Part shown: one piece after another, positions 10,799 to 63,720 of the stretch | How positions within the stretch are numbered: position 1 is the first letter of the stretch | Layout of the letters: the number at the start of each line of letters is the position of its first letter | Source: Octopus sinensis | Taxonomy: Eukaryota | Assembly (NCBI RefSeq): GCF_006345805.1 | Contig: NC_042999.1 | Coordinates: 132,866,001-132,930,000, forward strand | Direction: 5' to 3' | DNA length: 64,000 bases | The notes under the pieces: model-generated | The model's database searches: none | What the model saw: only the letters and a program-made list of their open reading frames with translations | Told to the model about the DNA's origin: nothing | Made by a program: the position numbers and the translations under genes

Positions 10799-11523
10799 GT
10801 GAAAAGCAACTTCACATGTGCTTCGGGGAACCTAATATACTCACTAACCTGCTCCGGGTGTCAAGAGCAGTACATAGGCCAAACAAAAAATAGTTTGCGT
10901 AAACGAATGGCCCTGCACAGATCCCAGATAAAAATTCCCCAAAACAGAAAAATAGCTTTTAGCCAACACATAGATACTTGCGCCAACAAAAAAACACCAA
11001 GCTTCAGGATTTTCCCCCTCTACCAATTTAGGGACGATACAACCTCGAGACAACGAATAAGTAAAGAAACTCTCTTTATTACAAAATACAGGCCACTTCT
11101 TAACGGGTCTACGACAAACAATTAATATACCTCAACTTCAGAATAAAAGAAATATTCACACACAAATATTACATTCCAAAGAATCCATTACTAATCACAG
11201 CTAAAATCACAGCTATAATCCATAACATGCCAACTTCAAGTCATACAACACCTCACTACTTAACCCATTCATATTTCCCTTCTCTGTTTTTTTCTTCTTC
11301 TCTCTTCTCTTCATCATCATCAATATCATCATCGTCGTCATAATCATCACCACCATCACCATCATCGTCATCTTCTCCTTCTCCTTCTTCTCCTTCTTCT
11401 CATCATCATTCATCATCATCGACATCGTCATCTTCTTCTTCTTCTTCTTCTTCTTCTTCTTCTCCACCTTCTACCCCTTAACTTTGTCACTAATGTTTTT
11501 TAGTATAACACCTACGCAAATTC

Positions 11524-13855: not shown

Positions 13856-14560
13856 CCACCTTCATGATCATAACTACCATCGTCATAATCATCATCATCA
13901 TCAACAACAACATCAAAGAACACCAGCTGTAAATTCAGCTTCAGCAACAATAACAACAACGGTTTTACAAAGTAATGGTAACCAGAATTGCAACGGCAAC
14001 GGCAGCGGCAACAAGAACAACAATAATTTCATCACCACCACCACCACCACCACACCACCACCACCACCACCCATCACCATCACCACCACCGCCGCCTCCG
14101 CCGTCGCCGCTACTGCCGCGCCACTGCCGCCGCCTGCTACCGTCACCTCTGCATTTTAAAACTTCACCCATTGCCCTACCCACCGCCGCCCTCACACGCA
14201 CTGTTGTCACGACACCATCACCACTAGCATCATCAACAGCAACAGCAGCCGTTCAAGAATTTGGACCTGGAGATCTCCATTTCCAGCGACTTCGAGGGCT
14301 ACCTCCCAGTGGTGTCGGGCGTCAACGAAGAGCTCTCGACTACAAGCCGACCAAAGTTTTTTTTTTCTCCCGCCCCTAAGCCCTAGCCCATCACCTAATC
14401 ACTAATCACCCTTACCCGTCTTGTTGCTTAGCAACAACAACAACAGCAACAGCAATTATACCAACGGCTTTACATAGTAAATGCAGTAAAAGTTACTACA
14501 ACAACAATAATAATGACAACAACAACAACAGTTAATTTGATAGCAGCAATAATTCTTTCT
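13100..14560. repeat. Compound trinucleotide low-complexity block (AAC/AGC/ATC/ACC)n with higher-order ATC repeat at 13480-13915
   Basis: Direct read; accounts for the poly-D, poly-M, poly-I and poly-P ORFs. Confidence 0.9.
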
Positions 14561-14579
14561 ATTACAAGGCATCAATACC

Positions 14580-15370
14580 AGTACTTGACTGGTAACTATT
14601 TTATCGACCTCGATTAGATGAAAGACAAAGTTGACCTCGGCAAAACTGGAACCTTAGAACTTCAAGTCGGACGAAACGCCGTTAAACATTTTGTTCAGAG
14701 TGTTAACGATTGTACTAGCTTGCTGTCTTTAAACTATCGTTTCTACTAGAGGGAAGAGGGCCGGTCGATTACATTAACCTCTGTTCAGTGCTCAACTGGT
14801 ACTAATGTTATCGATCCTGAAAAGACGAAAGGTAAATTCGACCTCAGCGAAATTTAAACTGAGAACGTAAAATCCGAAGAAATGCCGTTAATAATTTTGT
14901 CCGGCGTGTTAACGATTCTTATTTTTTTATTGCCCACAAGGGGCTAAACACAGAGGGGACAAACAAGGACAGACAAACGGATTAAGTCGATTATATCGAC
15001 CCCAGTGCGAAACTGATACTTATTTAATCGAAAGGATTAAAGGCAAATTCGGAGGAATTTGAACTCAGAACGTAGCGGCAGACGAAATACCGCTAAGCAT
15101 TTCGCCCGACGTACTAACGTTTCTGCCAGCTCGCCGCATCTAAAATATCGTTTCTACTAAAGGGCACAGGGCCTGAAATTTTGAAGAAAGAGGTCTGTCT
15201 TGTCGACTACATTAACCTCAGTTCAGTACTTGACTGGTCCTTATTTAATCGATCCTGAAAGGACGAAAGGCAAATTCTACCACGATGGAATTTAAACTGA
15301 GAACGTACAATCAAATGAAATGCCGTTAAAGCATTTTGTACGACATGCTAACGATTCTGTCAAATCACAG
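14580..15370 (-). mobile_element. Four head-to-tail SINE family B monomers
   Basis: gaaaggcaaa.t.gacc...gaaatttaaact.agaacg recurs at about 14625, 14830, 15040 and 15270. Confidence 0.8.
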
Positions 15371-17611: not shown

Positions 17612-18760
17612 CGTGAACAAAGACTCCTTGAACTTAGATCAACAACACTAATTAAAAGACATTACCGAATCTCATTAATAAATGATGGCATTAAAAGAGC
17701 TAAGGAAATAGATATACTAATGTTAAGGCAAACTAGCCGAAATACTAAACCAGACTTTAAAATTCTCCCGTACATTTCCACACATCACCCTAGAAACAAC
17801 GGAGCCTTCAACATTATCACCCAAAATCTTCCCATCCTCACAGCAGACAAAACAATGAATGAAATTTTAAGCTCATACAAAATTATAAAAAGCAAAATGC
17901 AACCGAAGTCACTGAAAAAAATATTAACCAGCACAAGGCTATATCCACTAACAACAGAGCCAAAAGTGAAAAAATGTGGTCGTCCTAACTGTGGAACATG
18001 CCCCTACCTTTTGGAGGGTTCAGAATTCCACTTCAAACAAGGTGAAGTATTTAAGATCAAATCAAATTTCACCTGCGCCTCGGAAAATCTAATCTATGCC
18101 ATGACATGCTTAGGATGTGGTAACCACTATATTGGACAAACAGGAATATCACTCCGTCGAGGAACCACCATCCACAAAGAAAAATCCACCGCACGCAATA
18201 CAGACAGTTACAGGTTAGTGAACACATAGAAAGGTGTGCTAGGAATCTTAATCTTAATTTCCAAATCTTCCCCTTCTATCAATGTTCACAGAACACCTCA
18301 ATGCAGAACACCTCAATTGAATAAAGAGGCAATTTTCATCAATAAATATCTTACCCAACTAAATATGAACACATAACTCAATACAGAACACTACAAACCC
18401 TTCAATTAATACCACTAACCCCCATACATCCCTTACATCATTCACATTACAATTCTATATCTAACCTAACTGCGCAAAATTCAGAACTACTTACCTCCCT
18501 TACAAATAATCTTTTTACTCGGGAATTATTAGACCTGACACCGTTCATTAACCGGTGTTCATTCAAAGCAATGAATAGTTAACTTACGAAACCGTCGGTA
18601 TGCTGAATCTCTTTAATTATCTCATAATAATGAGTTTTATGACTTTTATTACTTTTATTACTACCTCAGTTCATCTAAATGTATATATCTGTCGTTACTT
18701 TTCATAAAAAGTCTTTTTTTTTATTTACAATGTGCATTTTCGTTGATTTTTCTTAATCCC
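17608..18760 (+). mobile_element. Penelope-like element, 5'-truncated (linker + GIY-YIG + 3' region)
   Basis: ORF 17720-18229: LPYISTHHPRN...KKCGRPNCGTCPYL...SNFTCASENLIYAMTCLGCGNHYIGQT; frameshifted C-terminus to about 18365. Confidence 0.85.
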
Positions 18761-20412: not shown

Positions 20413-21938
20413 GTATATACATATATAATCATATGTATGTGTGTGTATGTATATGTTGATATATAAATATATGTACGTATGCACTCACACGCGCATACAT
20501 ATATATGACAAAAGAAAACAAGTTACATAATTATTTTAACAAGCCTACACTATTAGAAAGCATCACTCTCAGAGTTGAGTGCTCGTGGGACAATGCGTTT
20601 CATCGGAATCATTTAAAAATATTTGCCCATTCAAATATACACACACGATACATACATACATATATACATACATACATACATACACAACACACACACATAC
20701 ATACATACATACACACATACATACATACATTTCGCTTAGGCATTGCGAGACTGTAGAACTCAATATACGTATGTTTCAGGACAAATTGTTACATGAGTAT
20801 GTAGCGGTAGTAAGAAAAAGAGATGACACAGGAAAAGCAATGGTTATGTTGTGAACTTCATTAGCTTACAGCTGTTTCTGCTATGACACGCAGTGGACTC
20901 TTTGTACACACACACACACACACACACACATACACACACACACACATACACACACACACACACCACACACGCACACACACAAACGTACATAAACATAAGA
21001 ATTCAGAAACATTAGGAGACATAAAGCAATTCGTTTTTACCTGTGGAACTCGAAGTAGATAAAGTTATAAATAATAGCATTATACACCCAGGACCACGCT
21101 GATACCTTAGGAATAAAATTTAGGATTTCTCGGTTTTCTGGGAATCGATTTTGATAAAACTTTTCCCGGCTGGTTTGCACACTATGGGAACATCACTGTT
21201 ATGTTTTCATTATTCTGTGATTCCCAAGAATACGAGATTCCTTAGAAGTGACAGCAGTATGTAATCTAGCCAGGGATGCAAGACCTTTCTTCGGTATATT
21301 GCATTTTGGCGGCTGCGGTCACTTTAACCTCTTCAGACACCCTAACTGGGCTAACAAGTCTGTCCCCAATGATACCAGCCAACATTGGTGACGATCATCT
21401 CCAAAATAGACCCAACCATTCGCCCAATCGTCAGGTTCGTTAAGGGTCACCCTGGTTTCGTCTGTGAACAGAACACAACTCAAGTTTAACGTCATGTACT
21501 TTTGAGCCCATTAAAGCCTGAAACTTCTGTGAGGAGGCAGTTTCAGGGGTTCTTGCACGGGAGCCATGGCCTCGAAGATGTGACTTCTGCTGGTTTTCCG
21601 TACATGAGGAAGTCCAGAGGCGGTGAAAATGTCCAGGTTTCTCACGTAACTTGCGGCCAGTATTCCTCAAATCCCAAACTGGCACATTGTTGGATGTCCA
21701 CAATCGGATCGTTTCTTCCTTGGCGCTCATCTGGCTAAATAATCAATTATGTCACTAAATGTTATAATATTATTATGGTTATCTGTTAAATATATACTCA
21801 ATGTATGCTCAATATATAACATTTTCTGGAGAAAAATGTCTAGATGGGCGGCTATTTTCATTCAAAAGCTATAAACGTGGTTCACCCAAAAACTGAAAAA
21901 TCTGACACAAAAAAAGAAAGGACGTTACATAGAATAAT

Positions 21939-22318
21939 CTTTTCTACTCTAGGCACAAGGCCCAAAATTTTGGTGGAGGGGGCCAGTCGATTAGATCTAC
22001 CCCCGTATGCAACTGATACTTAATTTATCGACCCCGAAAGGATGAAAGGCAAAGTCGACCTCGGGGAAATTTGAACTCAGAACGTAAACACAGACGAAAT
22101 ACCTATTTCTTTACTACCCACAAGGGACTAAACACAGAGGGGATAAACAAGGACAGACATACGGGTTAAGTCGATTATATCGACCCCAGTGCGTAACTGG
22201 TACTTATTTAATCGACCCCGAAAGGATGAAAGGCAAAGTCGACCTCGGCGGAATTTGAACTCAGAACGTAGCGGCAGACGAAATACCGGCGTGCTAACGT
22301 TTCTGCCAGCTCGCCGCC
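21939..22318 (-). mobile_element. Dimeric SINE family B (3' part of the 5S-SINE chimera)
   Basis: Full head monomer plus headless second monomer, same structure as 63300-63720. Confidence 0.9.
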
Positions 22319-22333
22319 GTAAAGGATAGAAAG

Positions 22334-22453
22334 GTGTTTACAGCACCTAGGTATCCCAAGCGGTCACCCATCTAAATACTATCTAGGCTCGACGTTGCTT
22401 AACTTCGATGATCGGACGAGAACCGGTGTTTTCAAAGTGATATGGCCGTAATC
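22334..22453 (-). pseudogene. Full-length 5S rRNA retrocopy
   Basis: Reverse complement: GATTACGGCCATATCACTTTGAAAACACCGGTTCTCGTCCGATCATCGAAGTTAAGCAACGTCGAGCC...GATGGGTGACCGCTTGGGATACC..GTGCTGTA; metazoan 5S with box A and box C. Confidence 0.95.
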
Positions 22454-22639
22454 ACGTTACATAGAATAATGAAAACAATAATGGTGTTGTCATAGTGTGC
22501 CAACCAGCTGGGAAAAGTTTCATCAAATTCGATTCACAGAAAACCGAGAAATCTTAAATTTCATTCCTAAGCTATTAGCGTGGCTCTGCGTGTATGTTTT
22601 TCTCATGTGTTTCGCCGAATAAAATAACAAGCGATATTT

Positions 22640-23905: not shown

Positions 23906-23958
<53 letters not shown>

Positions 23959-23962
<4 letters not shown>

Positions 23963-24124
23963 GGTTTGCACACTATAGCAACATCACTGTTATGTTTTCA
24001 TTATTCTGTGATTCCTCAGAATACGAGATTCCTTAGAAGTGACAGCAGTGTGTCATCTAGCCAGGGATCCAAGAACTCCTTCGGTATATTGCAGTTAGCG
24101 GCTGCGGTCACTTTAACCTCTTCA
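23959..24124 (-). mobile_element. Partial copy of the Tc1 deletion derivative
   Basis: About 90% identical by eye to 21167-21335, including the same TIR/ORF junction. Confidence 0.85.
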
Positions 24125-44131: not shown

Positions 44132-44231
44132 NNNNNNNNNNNNNNNNNNNNNNNNNNNNNNNNNNNNNNNNNNNNNNNNNNNNNNNNNNNNNNNNNNNNN
44201 NNNNNNNNNNNNNNNNNNNNNNNNNNNNNNN
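44132..44231. other. Assembly gap (100 N)
   Basis: Direct read. Confidence 1.
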
Positions 44232-50166: not shown

Positions 50167-50613
50167 GAGAAGCCTAAATTTGATTTCAAATTTTGGCACA
50201 AGGCCAGGAAATTTCGGGGAAGTGTTTAACTGATACTTATTTCATCCATCCAAGAACGATGAAAGGCAAAGGTGAACACAGCGAAATTTGAACTCAGAGC
50301 ATAAAGAGGATGAAATGCCGCTAAGCATTTCCCCCCGGCTTGCTAAAGATTGTGCCAGCTACCAGCTTAGAGAAATCTAAATATTGGTTTTAAATTTTGG
50401 CACACAGTCAGCATGTTCGGGAAAAGGGATAAGCCGATTACATCGATCCCAGTACTTAACTGGTACTTATGTTATCGATCGCAAAAGGATGAAAGGCAAA
50501 TTCGACATGAGCTAAATTTGAACTCAGAAAGAAAAGACGGACGAAATAGTGCAAAGCGTTTTGCGCGGCGTACTAACGATTAAGTCGTCTCACTACCTTA
50601 GAGAAGCCTAAAT
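50167..50613 (-). mobile_element. Two SINE family B monomers in tandem, delimited by three copies of one 13-bp site
   Basis: gagaagcctaaat at 50167 and 50601, gagaaatctaaat at 50370. Confidence 0.8.
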
Positions 50614-55039: not shown

Positions 55040-56840
55040 TATTAATTGAAGAGATAACCTTCTTCTGCAAAGAAGTGGTAATCAATCTTTATCGAAAGGT
55101 ACTAGAAATACACGGAAACCCATTCTCCCTGAACATAGAAATTAACTGGAAGAGATATCTAGATGACTGCTTCATTCTTTGGCATGAAAGTATAGAGAGA
55201 CTTAAAGAATTTTAAGCACTTCTAAATGGACTTGACATAAACATTCAATTTACGATGGAATAATAGCCATAAACAACTTCCATTTCTCGACATCCTCATT
55301 AAGAAATGCAACAACAAAATAGAAACAGATATATGCTATAAGCCCACAGACTCCAAGCTATATCTACCGTTCAACTTATGCTACTCAAGACACACCAGAA
55401 TGAATATCCCAGCCAGGCAAAAAGGATTCGTACTATGGTATCTGATACAGGCACAAGGGACACACGACTACATGAACTAAAGGATACACTCATCAGCAGG
55501 AACTACCCACCATTACTAACTGATGTAGGTTTTCAATATGCCCTACAACTTAACATCCACGAACTCAGACAACCCAAACTAAAGAAGGATTTACAACCAA
55601 AAGTCCTACCATACGTGTCCGCACACAACCCCCTAAACAACGAGGCCTTCGACACCATCCTCCAGAACATTCCTTTACTAAAAAGGAACCATAGAATGAA
55701 TCAAATCCTCCAAACGCACACCACCATAAAGACCAAAAGACAACCCAAGACAGTGAAAAGTCTTCTAATACAAGCCCAAGTACACTCGTCAACAACATTG
55801 AAACCGATAGTAAAAAAATGCAGAAGACCTAACTATGGTATATGCGTCAACCTAATTGAGGGATTGGAGTTCTCCTTCAAACAGGGTCGACGTTTTACAG
55901 TGAAAAACAACTTCACATGTGCTTCGGAAATCCTAATATATGTTTTGTAAATATTTGAGCCTATAAAAATACTGAAGATAACTTGCTCAGGTGTCGAGAG
56001 CAATACATTGGTCAAACTAAAAGCTGTCTACGCTGGAGGATGACCATACATAGATCCCAGATTAAGATACGGGAATACAGAAAATAGCATTAAGTGGACA
56101 CATCGACATTTGCGCCACTAACGAACAACCCAACTTTAGAGTTTTTACACTCTATAGATTCAGGGACAATGCAACCTATAATCAGCACATTAGCAAAGAG
56201 TTATACTTTATCGCAAAATATAGACCTCTTTTGAATGCTTCCACCACAGATAGCACTACTACAAGGATCTTAGAATAATACCCACGCAAATATTAAAAAT
56301 GATAGATATATTAAGAACAGTCGCATGAATTTAGTTAGAAGAGTTCCTACCACTACAACTACAACCACAACAGGTAAGTTTTAGGTCACTTGAACATTAA
56401 AGATTCCACGAGCAGTCTACTACTGTGTCATACCACTCCCGTGTTTTTCTTTTCTTTCTTCTTCTTCTTCTCCTCCCCTCCTCCTCCATCGCCACCTCCT
56501 CCTTCGCCGTCTCCTTGCTCGGCTACTGCTGCTTAAATCAATCAAACTTCAGAACCAACATTTCTTTGCACCCAGAAACACTGTCTTCAGATCTGCTACT
56601 ACCTATCGAGCCTTCACAAAGAGAAAGAGAGACAGAAAAGACGAAAATGTCCTAATTATTTGAAGACTATGGAAATATTTACAAAACATTTCATTAATTT
56701 TTTCTTCAATTTAATTGGTTTTCCTGTTTTACTCTTAATTGAAAAAGTCGAAAAGATTGAACATGGTACTAAACTTTACAAAATGCATTTCATGATAAAA
56801 TTATTTTAGCATTTTCTACCTCGTCTTAGTTTACTTATAT
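55040..56840 (+). mobile_element. Penelope-like element, 5'-truncated, with RT (RYLDD), thumb, GIY-YIG and 3' region; several stops and frameshifts
   Basis: WKRYLDDCFILW...IQFTME...LPFLDILI...TDICYKPTDS...NNFTCASEILIY...ITCSG..EQYIGQT...KYRPLLNA; 3' end homologous to 11950-12120. Confidence 0.9.
56736..56771 (+). ncRNA. Degenerate HHR retaining the UUGAAAA core
   Basis: UUGAAAA-AGUC(GAAAA)GAUU-GAAC-AUG-GUA-CUA; one core A lost. Confidence 0.4.
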
Positions 56841-57764: not shown

Positions 57765-58009
57765 ATTAAAAATTACATGTAACAATGTTTTATTTAAAAT
57801 AAGTGGAACGCATATTTTCCTACTGAAGTAAATATTTGAGCCTATAAAATACTTATGATAATTTTCTTTTCACCTATTTATTTATATATTATTCATATGA
57901 ATTTTAAAATTATATATCACATAACCGTTACAATGTTGATATATAATTTGTGTCGTGTAAACTTGTATTGTGTGTAGTCGTTTTTATATTGTATTCTTTC
58001 TACTACAGG

Positions 58010-58410
58010 CTCATGGCGTTGGGATTAGGTAGGAAGGGTGCTAGTCGATTAAATTGACTCCAGTGCTCAACTGGTACTTATTTTAGCGACCTAAACTGGC
58101 GGAAAGACTCAATAGACCCTAGGAAAATTTGGTGTGGATTAAATGCCGTTAAGAATTCTTTACGAGCAAAAGTTTCTGTCAGCTCACCGCACCTTCGTCT
58201 AAAACAGTTACAAGGCCTGAAATTTTGAGGAAGAAAGGTAGTCGATTAATGGACCCCAGTGTTCAACTGCTACTTATTTTATCGACCCAGAAAGAATGAA
58301 AGGCAAAGTCGACTTCGGCAGAATTTGAACTCAGCAAAGTCAGAAGAAATGCTGCTAAACATTTTCTCCGGCGTGCTACCGGTACGAGTATTACCTGCTC
58401 TCCGCCTTTA
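58010..58410 (-). mobile_element. Two SINE family B monomers in tandem
   Basis: cagtg.tcaactg.tactta motif twice. Confidence 0.7.
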
Positions 58411-63299: not shown

Positions 63300-63720
63300 T
63301 CTTTTCTACTCTAGGCACAAGCCCCGAATTTTTGGGAAGGAGTCAGTCAATTAGATCAACCCCAGTACACAACTGGTACTTAATTTATCGACCTCGAAAG
63401 CTTAAAAGGCAAAGTCGACCACGGCGAAATTTGAACTCAGAACGTAACGGCAGACGAAATACCTATTTCCTTATTGCCCACAAGGGGCTAAACATTGAGT
63501 GGACAAACAAGTAAACACAAACGGATTAAGTCGATTATATCGACCCCAGTGCGTCACTGGTACTTAATTTATCGACACCGAAAGGATGAAAGGCAAAGTC
63601 GACCTCGGCGAAATTTGAACTCAAAACGTAACGGCAGACGAAATACGGCTACGCATTTCGCCCGGCGTGCTAACGTTTCTGCCAGCTCACCGCCTTCGTT
63701 TCTACCAGCTCGCCGTCTTA
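63300..63720 (-). mobile_element. Dimeric SINE family B
   Basis: Same dimer as 21939-22318 but with no 5S attached. Confidence 0.9.

What the first reader, a model, noticed from the sequence alone, without database searches (positions are those of the whole stretch)
21939..22453. 5S rRNA-SINE chimera retroposed as one unit (candidate nascent 5S-headed SINE)
Seen: on the minus strand, a full-length 5S starting at its +1, a short linker with only T3 runs (cacc-TTT-ctatcc-TTT-ac), then a complete dimeric SINE B. The 515 bp are bounded by a perfect 17-bp duplication acgttacatagaataat (21922-21938, 22454-22470). Known: Pol III stops at about four or more T; 5S-derived SINE3 families and RT template-switch chimeras exist in other animals. 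Inference: either read-through from a terminator-less 5S copy into a SINE, which gives a new 5S-promoter SINE with tandem Pol III promoters, or a template switch during retroposition.
Basis: partly seen in the sequence, partly recalled or inferred. Interest (0 to 1): 0.85.

Follow-up and report, generated by a model that had tools for sequence, protein, structure and literature searches.

The report
5S rRNA–SINE chimeric retrocopy
A full-length copy of 5S ribosomal RNA, a 14-base filler and a complete two-unit SINE sit inside one 17-base target-site duplication, so they most likely entered this animal genome as one reverse-transcribed piece; this kind of chimera is already known, and nothing here shows that it has multiplied.

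Summary
On the minus strand, a perfect 17-bp direct repeat (22470-22454 and 21938-21922) encloses three things:
- a full-length 5S rRNA copy (22453-22335; Rfam 98.8 bits, model positions 1-120);
- a T3-only linker;
- a complete dimeric tRNA-type SINE (22320-21939).

The repeat is a genuine duplication of locus-specific sequence.

The best explanation is one LINE-driven retroposition of a composite cDNA. The reverse transcriptase probably switched template from the 5' end of the SINE RNA to the 3' end of 5S RNA. Three results favour this over Pol III read-through:
- the linker is nearly a copy of the SINE's own core motif (4 of 2000 shuffles score as well);
- other composite SINE units in the window also lie within single duplications;
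- a second dimer copy carries an extra 23-nt head fragment.

One rival remains open. The 7 nt after the downstream repeat equal the first 7 nt of the linker, so the SINE could have a 24-26-bp duplication that the 5S entered separately.

The "nascent 5S-headed SINE" claim is unsupported. The window holds one copy. The source genome is in no searchable collection. The copy has a T4 stretch 25 nt before the tail.

This is a new member of a known kind, comparable to AmnSINE1, HaSE3 and L1 chimeras.

The parts
22454..22470 (-). Upstream copy of the target-site duplication, ATTATTCTATGTAACGT. It directly abuts 5S position +1.
   Evidence: exactly two copies in the window, none other with up to 3 mismatches. 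Searches show that the last 6 nt are locus-specific, not part of repeat X.
22335..22453 (-). Full-length 5S rRNA copy of 119 nt, starting at +1. Three base pairs are non-canonical. It is a retro-pseudogene, not a gene in an array.
   Evidence: RF00001, 98.8 bits, E 2.4e-20, model positions 1-120, not truncated. It is the only 5S in the window.
22321..22334 (-). Filler or linker, CCTTTCTATCCTTT. It has two T3 runs and no T4. It matches the SINE core motif CCTTTCATCCTTT with one extra T. Its first 7 nt equal the 7 nt after the downstream duplication.
   Evidence: 4 of 2000 shuffles reach the score against the SINE. One search gives the 7-mer frequency as 1.3e-4 per position. One search shows the linker is unique in the window.
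22105..22320 (-). Left unit of the dimeric SINE: tRNA-type head starting ACGGCGGCGAGCTGG, core domain, and its own tail-like end ...GTAGTAAAGAAAT. It lacks 16 nt (near 22288/22289) that other copies have after CACGC.
   Evidence: alignment with the copies at 63301, 14755 and 45140; contig L003 from another sample carries this unit on its own.
21939..22104 (-). Right unit of the dimeric SINE. It is 5'-truncated (starts at GGTATTTCG), has the core domain, and ends in the 3' tail ...GCCTAGAGTAGAAAAG with no poly(A).
   Evidence: The same unit junction and the same 3' end occur in the copy at 63301-63696.
21964..21967 (-). The only run of four T in the 515-nt chimera, 25 nt before its 3' end. The other copies that align here lack a T4: the 63301 dimer reads AAAAATTCGGGG and the 30998 monomer AAAACTGCTGG. 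Two more monomers read from their printed sequences have AAAATTTCAGG (T3).
   Evidence: One search lists the T runs. Searches show the other copies.
21922..21938 (-). Downstream copy of the target-site duplication, ATTATTCTATGTAACGT. It directly follows the SINE 3' end.
21915..21921 (-). CCTTTCT, immediately after the downstream duplication and identical to the first 7 nt of the linker (8 of 9 over CCTTTCTTT against CCTTTCTAT). It is followed by a run of seven T (CCTTTCTTTTTTTG).
22460..22595 (-). Older repeat 'X', the insertion target. Other copies lie at 21082-21340 (+) and 23958-24100 (+).
   Evidence: (85.5% over 138 bp).

Best explanation
A single LINE-mediated (target-primed) retroposition event inserted a composite cDNA into the end of an older repeat and created a 17-bp target-site duplication.

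Inferred steps:
1. The partner LINE's reverse transcriptase started on the 3' tail of a dimeric tRNA-type SINE RNA and copied it to its 5' end.
2. Instead of finishing, it switched template. It first copied a short stretch that looks like the SINE core (CCUUUCAUCCUUU). It then moved, possibly through CCUUU microhomology, onto the 3' end of a 5S rRNA molecule.
3. It copied the 5S to its first nucleotide.

The result is a 5S retro-pseudogene fused head-to-tail to a full SINE.

Shown: the anatomy, the single duplication, the full length of both parts, and the recurrence of composite SINE insertions in the window.
Inferred: the order of the jumps and the identity of the enzyme.

In its present state the locus is most likely an inert one-off insertion, not an active master copy.
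For: - Full-length 5S from +1 and full-length SINE from its consensus 5' end to its consensus 3' end, in the same orientation.
- Both are enclosed by one perfect 17-bp duplication of locus-specific sequence.
- Neither part alone has a duplication of its own; the best direct repeat is 8 of 9, at chance level for that scan.
- The linker equals the SINE core motif with one extra T, and the alignment extends to 20 of 24 columns. Only 4 of 2000 composition-preserving shuffles score as well. A read-through flank would not be expected to look like that.
- The reverse transcriptase, or the system, makes composites repeatedly in this window:
  - two SINEs at 58409-58000 lie inside one 12-bp duplication, ATACAATATAAA;
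  - the dimer at 63718-63301 carries an extra 23-nt copy of the SINE head inside its 14-of-16 duplication;
  - a three-SINE array at 15352-14554 has a 10-bp repeat at its ends;
  - the same left unit is joined to differently truncated right units in two dimers.
- In the SINE-SINE junctions at 15160 and 58210, the upstream unit ends in TTTT a few bases before the next unit begins. Here the linker likewise ends in TTT just before the SINE start.
- Literature: template switching to 5S rRNA is the accepted origin of 5S plus tRNA-SINE chimeras (PMC3272025, PMC4758252, PMC5786205) and of 5S/L1 chimeras (bioRxiv 10.1101/2025.02.02.635956).
Against: - The first 7 nt of the linker also equal the 7 nt that follow the downstream duplication. 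That 7-mer occurs at 1.3e-4 per position in the window. Under this model it must be coincidence or an unexplained microhomology effect.
- A 14-nt templated filler requires two jumps rather than one.
- The 5S genes' own 3' flank in this species is unknown, so the linker could still be a natural pre-5S trailer.
- No second copy, source locus or empty allele could be examined.
Confidence: 0.55

Rival explanations
1. Read-through or family model. Somewhere in the genome a SINE sits 14 nt downstream of a 5S copy that lacks a T4 terminator. Pol III starts at 5S +1 and reads through into the SINE. The LINE machinery then retroposes that transcript. This locus would be a daughter copy, possibly one of an amplified 5S-headed SINE family with tandem type 1 and type 2 promoters.
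For: - There is no T4 anywhere between 5S +1 and element position 486, so such a transcript is physically possible.
- The 5S starts exactly at +1.
- The SINE part lacks 16 nt of its tRNA-like head. This recalls the loss of the tRNA promoter part described for 5S-headed Deu-SINEs (PMC4758252, citing Nishihara 2006).
- A SINE of another animal with the same core domain contains a 5S-like stretch (L001), so 5S material has entered this SINE superfamily elsewhere.
Against: - The window has a single junction, against about 15 SINE copies.
- The linker resembles the SINE core rather than arbitrary flank.
- This copy has a T4 stretch 25 nt before the tail, which would truncate its own Pol III transcripts.
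- Retroposed 5S copies are thought to be weakly transcribed without upstream elements (PMC3272025).
- No other junction copy was found, but the searches were nearly blind to this genome.
Confidence: 0.2
2. Two events. The SINE, with a short 5' filler, inserted first and made a 24-26-bp duplication, ATTATTCTATGTAACGTCCTTTCT(A/T)T. Later, or during repair of the same event, a 5S cDNA was captured between nt 17 and 18 of the upstream copy without a duplication of its own. It may have been primed by pairing of the 5S RNA 3' end (CCUUU) with the target.
For: - The repeat can be extended across the 5S: CCTTTCTAT after the 5S against CCTTTCTTT after the downstream 17-mer (8 of 9, with the first 7 identical). 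Each begins exactly at its junction.
- The 7-mer frequency is 1.3e-4 per position.
Against: - As a free local alignment, the linker-to-flank similarity is not significant in this pyrimidine-rich context (349 of 2000 shuffles).
- It requires a duplication-less, tail-less insertion of a precisely full-length 5S within one specific 26-bp target.
- It requires a duplication longer than any other seen here (10-17 bp).
- It leaves the linker's similarity to the SINE core as coincidence.
- The implied nick site (GAAAGG^ACG) does not resemble the AT^ sites inferred from the other three insertions. That inference was read off the flanks shown.
Confidence: 0.15
3. RNA ligation before reverse transcription. 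A cellular RNA ligase (RtcB-type) joined 5S RNA to the 5' end of a SINE RNA, and the fused RNA was then retroposed normally.
For: This mechanism was shown experimentally for U6/L1 chimeras (PMC6789731). It predicts a full-length 5' small RNA, the same orientation and one duplication, as seen here.
Against: - There is a 14-nt filler between the two RNAs, resembling SINE core, rather than a clean end-to-end joint.
- From background knowledge, 5S RNA is not known to carry the 2',3'-cyclic phosphate end that makes U6 a ligase substrate.
Confidence: 0.05
4. A DNA-level accident or chance adjacency. On this view the 17-bp repeat is not a target-site duplication but belongs to a segmental rearrangement or an assembly artefact.
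For: The region is repeat-dense. Copies of repeat X lie on both sides, within 1.6 kb, in opposite orientation to the copy that flanks the chimera.
Against: - The repeat abuts the transcript's +1 and the SINE's consensus 3' end to the base.
- The 17-mer is unique to these two sites.
- Its length matches the duplications of other SINE insertions.
Confidence: 0.03

Closest known systems
Bipartite chimeric retrocopies made by LINE reverse-transcriptase template switching (U6/L1, U3/L1, 5S/L1 and 5S/Alu type chimeras of mammals; Buzdin et al., cited in PMC4758252; catalogue in bioRxiv 10.1101/2025.02.02.635956)
   Same: - The small Pol III RNA is at the 5' side and the retroelement at the 3' side.
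- One target-site duplication surrounds both.
- Each insertion is a separate event.
- Switching to small RNAs is preferred.
   Different: - The 3' partner here is a complete non-poly(A) SINE, not a 3' fragment of L1 with poly(A).
- The host is an unidentified non-mammalian animal with a different LINE partner.
- In the mammalian catalogue the 5S pieces are mostly truncated and antisense. Here the 5S is full-length and sense.
- A 14-nt templated-looking filler is present.
AmnSINE1 and 5S-headed Deu-SINEs (Nishihara, Smit & Okada 2006, as summarised in PMC4758252 and PMC3272025)
   Same: The architecture is a 5S rRNA sequence fused to the 5' end of a tRNA-derived SINE. This is the proposed first step before the 5S promoter takes over.
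   Different: Those are amplified, conserved families in which the tRNA part is partly lost. Here there is a single copy, with an almost complete tRNA-type head (minus 16 nt) and no evidence of amplification.
HaSE3 of Helicoverpa armigera (PMC3272025; PMC5786205)
   Same: It is an invertebrate example of a 5S head joined to the body and tail of a co-resident tRNA-SINE (HaSE1). It is explained by template switching from SINE RNA to 5S rRNA.
   Different: In HaSE3 the 5S replaces the tRNA head and central domain, and HaSE3 is multi-copy in several moths. Here the whole SINE is retained and only one copy is known.
SINE3 of zebrafish and the megabat and springhare 5S SINEs (Kapitonov & Jurka 2003; Gogolevsky et al. 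2009; cited in PMC3272025)
   Same: They have a 5S-derived head carrying the type 1 internal promoter and a LINE-recognised tail.
   Different: Family status (many copies, a consensus, subfamilies) is their defining property, and it is not shown here.
RtcB-ligated U6/L1 chimeric RNAs (PMC6789731)
   Same: The end product is the same: a small RNA fused 5' to a retroelement within one duplication.
   Different: The mechanism is RNA ligation rather than cDNA template jumping. It predicts a clean joint, and here there is a 14-nt filler.

Membership tests
LINE-mediated chimeric retrocopy (template-switch type) | The 5' part is a copy of a small cellular RNA that starts at the RNA's first nucleotide. 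| tested here: met
   The 5S covers model positions 1-120 and starts at 22453, directly after the duplication.
LINE-mediated chimeric retrocopy (template-switch type) | The 3' part is a retroelement in the same orientation that ends at its normal 3' end. | tested here: met
   The SINE aligns to the very end (TAGAGTAGAAAAG) of the independent copy at 63301.
LINE-mediated chimeric retrocopy (template-switch type) | One target-site duplication encloses the whole composite, and neither part has its own. | tested here: met
   The 17-bp repeat is perfect (17 of 17) and unique in the window. Repeats around each part alone reach at most 8 of 9. Caveat: the 8-of-9 repeat around the SINE sits exactly at the junctions (see the two-event rival).
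LINE-mediated chimeric retrocopy (template-switch type) | The two parts are not adjacent at any source locus, so the fusion arose at the RNA or cDNA level. | not testable with these tools
   The source genome is absent from all searchable collections.
SINE3 / 5S-headed SINE family | A 5S-derived head containing the internal control region. | tested here: met
   The whole 5S, including model positions 50-97, is present. Promoter activity was not tested.
SINE3 / 5S-headed SINE family | A 3' tail shared with, or recognised by, a partner LINE. | tested here: inconclusive
   The tail is the one used by other mobilised SINE copies. No LINE with that tail was found in the window.
SINE3 / 5S-headed SINE family | Many dispersed copies share the head-body junction and have different target-site duplications. 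| not testable with these tools
   There is one junction in 64 kb. Genome-wide searches were impossible or uninformative.
SINE3 / 5S-headed SINE family | Pol III transcription runs from the 5S promoter through to the tail. | not testable with these tools
   Sequence evidence only. There is no T4 until element positions 487-490. That T4 lies 25 nt before the 3' end and would cut off the tail.
Functional 5S rRNA gene | A tandem array or gene context with a T-run terminator directly after the 3' end. | tested here: not met
   It is a single copy flanked by a duplication and followed by ACCTTTC, with T3 only. Three base pairs are non-canonical.
   The copy at 63301-63696 shares the unit junction and both ends, and has its own 14-of-16 duplication. 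Related units occur in contigs from other samples.

The most novel reading that the evidence does not exclude
This locus belongs to, or founded, a 5S-headed SINE lineage that is still at the earliest stage. A complete 5S (type 1 promoter) would sit in tandem with a nearly complete tRNA-type SINE (type 2 promoter), amplifying in an invertebrate genome. That would be a living example of the intermediate postulated for AmnSINE1-like families.

The foreign SINE in L001, which shares the core domain and carries a 5S-like segment, hints that 5S material has been recruited more than once in this SINE superfamily.
Probability: 0.13. Interest if true: 0.6.

Novelty: new member of a known kind. Interest (0 to 1): 0.33.

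Why it matters
5S-headed SINE families are thought to begin as exactly this kind of accident: a reverse transcriptase jumps from a SINE RNA onto 5S rRNA. Almost all known cases are old families in which the original fusion has been eroded. A clean copy bounded by its duplication preserves the joint, because the full 5S, the filler and the full SINE are all intact. It therefore gives sequence-level clues to how the jump happened, such as microhomology, multiple jumps and the use of U-ended Pol III RNAs.

If the junction proved to be multi-copy, it would be an early-stage 5S-headed SINE in an invertebrate. If it is single-copy, it is an ordinary though tidy chimeric retro-pseudogene.

Tried and rejected
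**Copy number of the junction**
- A protein search with the 51-aa ORF spanning 5S, linker and SINE found no candidate. This negative is weak. A later profile search recovered a SINE ORF (P0121) that shares several 5-residue words with that query, so the word index is incomplete. In addition, the junction frames lack start codons.
- Exact DNA scans with a 23-nt SINE head word found nothing in the viral, metagenome or prokaryote-genome collections.
- A 24-nt core word hit only one metagenome contig, L001, from a different animal.
- The single HMMER representative search was not run. The junction ORFs are not callable as genes, and the database holds almost nothing from this genome.

**Finding the source genome**
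- An exact look-up of a 273-aa LINE ORF found nothing on record.
- Its best homologue is only 65% identical, and that contig (L002) has no SINE.
- A profile of SINE-derived ORFs found six weak hits. The ones looked up come from two Logan runs and one ENA metagenome. The run accessions could not be traced in the literature.
- The organism remains unidentified. The 5S looks arthropod-like to me from memory, and I gave that no weight.

**Ideas rejected**
- That the SINE head is itself 5S-derived: no significant similarity.
- That the SINE heads are recognisable tRNAs: ARAGORN finds none.
- That other small-RNA chimeras lie in the window: all other Rfam hits at E<=1 fall below their gathering scores; most are miRNA models and the ones I checked sit on microsatellites.
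- That the 17-mer is merely the end of repeat X: its last 6 nt are locus-specific.

**Uninformative**
- Folding the 5S plus linker (z-score -0.35).
- The bacterial promoter and terminator scan.
- Pfam on LINE and Penelope-like ORF fragments: no hits.
- A literature search for the SINE sequence strings: nothing.

Full report
**1. What is in the sequence**

Read on the minus strand, the interval contains four things in order.
- A 119-nt 5S rRNA copy lies at 22453..22335. Rfam RF00001 scores it at 98.8 bits against a gathering score of 38 (E 2.4e-20). It covers model positions 1-120, is not truncated, and has three non-canonical pairs.
- Then come 16 nt, CCTTTCTATCCTTTAC, whose only T runs are T3.
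- Then comes a 380-nt SINE that ends ...GCCTAGAGTAGAAAAG at 21939.
- A BLAST of the 515 nt against the window shows that positions 136-515 form a repeated element. A second copy with the same two-unit architecture lies at 63301-63696 (84.8% over 396 columns). A related dimer lies at 14755-15137, and about a dozen single units are scattered through the window.

The alignment shows that the chimera's SINE starts at the family's 5' end. The consensus start is AAGGCGGCGAGCTGG and the chimera reads ACGGCGGCGAGCTGG, so the 'AC' is probably SINE. The SINE also stops at the family's 3' end. It lacks 16 nt that the other copies have after CACGC.

The 5S is the only credible RNA-family match in the 64 kb. 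All other hits at E<=1 fall below their gathering scores; most are miRNA models, and those I checked lie on microsatellites.

**2. The duplication is real**

ATTATTCTATGTAACGT occurs at 22470-22454 and 21938-21922 and nowhere else, even with three mismatches. One copy touches 5S +1 and the other touches the last base of the SINE tail.

The upstream flank (22460-22595) belongs to an older repeat, 'X', with copies at 21082-21340 and 23958-24100. Those copies continue ...CATTATTCTGTGATTCC... At this locus the sequence reads ...CATTATTCTATG followed by TAACGT. Both 17-mers contain the locus-specific TAACGT. So they are a duplication of this site and not two ends of X.

The length fits other SINE insertions in the window:
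- 14 of 16 for the dimer at 63718-63301;
- 12 of 12 for a two-SINE unit at 58409-58000;
- 10 of 10 for a three-SINE array at 15352-14554.

**3. One event or two**

A scan for direct repeats around the 5S alone or the SINE alone finds nothing better than 8 of 9, which is the chance level for that scan.

One of those 8-of-9 matches deserves attention because of where it sits. The 9 nt after the 5S (CCTTTCTAT) resemble the 9 nt after the downstream 17-mer (CCTTTCTTT), and the first seven are identical.
- That 7-mer has a frequency of 1.3e-4 per position in the window.
- In this pyrimidine-rich context a free local alignment of the linker against the flank is not significant (349 of 2000 shuffles).

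Formally, the SINE plus a 5-7-nt filler could have a 24-26-bp duplication that the 5S interrupts. I keep this as a rival at about 0.15, for four reasons:
- it needs a duplication-less, tail-less insertion of an exactly full-length 5S into one particular 26-bp target;
- it needs a duplication longer than any other seen here;
- its implied nick site is unlike those of the other insertions;
- a bare 5S RNA has no tail for a LINE that evidently recognises a specific, non-poly(A) SINE 3' end.

**4. Template switch or read-through**

Four observations point to template switching.
- The 14-nt filler CCTTTCTATCCTTT is the SINE's own core motif CCTTTCATCCTTT with one extra T. That motif is present in both units, at 22233-22221 and 22049-22037. 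The alignment continues into the head, for 20 of 24 columns. Only 4 of 2000 composition-preserving shuffles of the linker score as well against the SINE. A random 5S-gene flank would not be expected to look like that.
- Composite insertions are the rule in this window. Examples are the two-SINE unit within one 12-bp duplication, the three-SINE array, and the dimer family itself. In that family a complete left unit with its own tail-like end is joined to a 5'-truncated right unit. A second, independent dimer joins the same left unit to a differently truncated right unit.
- The dimer at 63301 carries an extra 23-nt copy of the SINE head inside its duplication. This is the kind of short added piece expected from a reverse transcriptase that keeps jumping after reaching a 5' end.
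- In the SINE-SINE joints at 15160 and 58210, the upstream unit ends in TTTT a few bases before the next unit. In the chimera the filler ends in TTT immediately before the SINE start. This fits jumps onto the U-ended 3' termini of Pol III transcripts.

Read-through remains possible, because there is no T4 between 5S +1 and element position 486. It explains none of these four points, however. Ligation of the two RNAs before reverse transcription, as shown for U6/L1 (PMC6789731), predicts a clean joint and is less likely.

**5. Is it a nascent SINE family?**

This could not be tested genome-wide. The source genome is in none of the collections I could search.
- The junction ORF found nothing (this is a weak negative, as explained under 'tried and rejected').
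- The SINE head word is absent from the viral, metagenome and prokaryote contigs.
- The core word hits a single foreign contig.
- The best homologue of a local LINE ORF is only 65% identical.
- A profile of SINE-derived ORFs recovers six weak hits; the three looked up come from two Logan runs and one ENA metagenome.

Within the window there is one junction among roughly 15 SINE copies. The copy also has the only T4 of the element at 21967-21964, 25 nt before its 3' end. No other copy that aligns there has a T4: the 63301 dimer reads AAAAATTCGGGG and two monomers read AAAATTTCAGG. A Pol III transcript from the 5S promoter would therefore tend to lose the tail needed for mobilisation. Retroposed 5S promoters are also considered weak without upstream elements (PMC3272025). 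I put the chance that the junction is multi-copy at roughly 0.13-0.2.

**6. Comparison with what is known**

The structure works like the bipartite chimeric retrocopies made by LINE reverse transcriptases. These include the U6/L1 and 5S/L1 chimeras (bioRxiv 10.1101/2025.02.02.635956; Buzdin et al., cited in PMC4758252).

It has the architecture proposed as the starting point of 5S-headed SINEs:
- AmnSINE1 and Deu-SINEs, in which 5S is fused to the 5' end of a tRNA-derived head that is later partly lost (PMC4758252);
- CoeSINE5 (PMC5786205).

It meets the structural criteria of a chimeric retrocopy. It does not meet, or cannot be tested for, the criteria of a SINE3 family, namely copy number and transcription. 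It is not a functional 5S gene.

It differs from the mammalian 5S/L1 chimeras in three ways. Those are mostly truncated and antisense; here the 5S is full-length and sense. The 3' partner here is a complete non-poly(A) SINE. And there is a templated-looking filler.

**7. Verdict**

This is a new member of a known kind. Its interest is moderate to low, as a tidy, well-preserved example that could inform the mechanics of template jumping. Its interest would rise if the junction proved to be multi-copy.

The host organism was not identified. The window is 37% G+C, about 9% perfect microsatellite, rich in LINE and Penelope-like fragments, and has a 100-N gap at 44132-44231.

Noticed in passing
L001 (metagenome contig Ga0066187_1002493), 6395-6613: A SINE-like element from a different animal shares the ~50-nt core domain (GGTCGACTTTGCCTTTCATCCTTTCGAGGTCGATAAA) and begins ..TTACGGCGGCG, like the chimera's SINE. 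It has consensus-like A and B boxes (TGGCATAGTGG and GGTTCGACTCC, judged by eye). Between them are 50 nt that are 78% identical to positions 42-91 of the window's 5S (0 of 1000 shuffles score as well). Rfam does not call it a 5S. It may be a tRNA/5S hybrid SINE head.
   Followed up: partly
window 58000-58409 (-): Two SINE units joined head to tail lie inside a single perfect 12-bp target-site duplication, ATACAATATAAA. This is a composite retroposed as one unit.
   Followed up: partly
window 63696-63718 (-): The dimeric SINE copy at 63301-63696 is preceded by an extra 23-nt partial copy of its own head (AAGACGGCGAGCTGGTAGAAACG). This lies inside its 14-of-16 duplication, AATATAATTCGTGGTT / AATATACTTAGTGGTT.
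   Followed up: partly
window 14554-15352 (-) and 50190-50597 (-): There are head-to-tail arrays of three and two SINE units separated by only a few bases. The first array has a 10-bp repeat, ATTATTGCTG, near both ends, with about 13 unexplained nt before the first unit. At least two tail types exist: ...TAGTAGAAACGAT and ...GTGCCAAAATTTGAAACCAAT.
   Followed up: partly
window 22288/22289 (-): The chimera's SINE lacks 16 nt of the head (approximately CGGGCGAAATGCTTAG). The deletion ends at GGTATTTCG, the same point where the 5'-truncated right unit of the dimer begins. This may be a preferred break or jump point.
   Followed up: no
window 21082-21340 (+), 22460-22595 (-), 23958-24100 (+): An unclassified repeat 'X' has three copies within 3 kb (85% identity). 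The copy that served as the insertion target diverges from the others after ...ATTATTCTATG.
   Followed up: partly
window 10799-11125, 17720-18229, 55378-55950 (+): ORFs with a motif like ...NFTCAS.NLIY..TC..C...YIGQT... look to me like the GIY-YIG end of Penelope-like elements (from memory). Pfam gave no hit for the two tested.
   Followed up: partly
window 44132-44231, and the window as a whole: There is a 100-N assembly gap. About 9% of the window is perfect microsatellite of 12 nt or longer, including (TA)n, (CA)n, (CT)n and (TATC)n. These produce most of the sub-threshold miRNA hits in Rfam.
   Followed up: no
L003 (ENA ERZ23499275 scaffold_366940), 150-377: The left unit of the dimeric SINE, including its ...GGGTAATAACGAAAT end, occurs on its own (about 80% identity to the window copies) in a metagenome scaffold. 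This supports the view that the 'dimer' is a fusion of two once-independent SINEs.
   Followed up: partly
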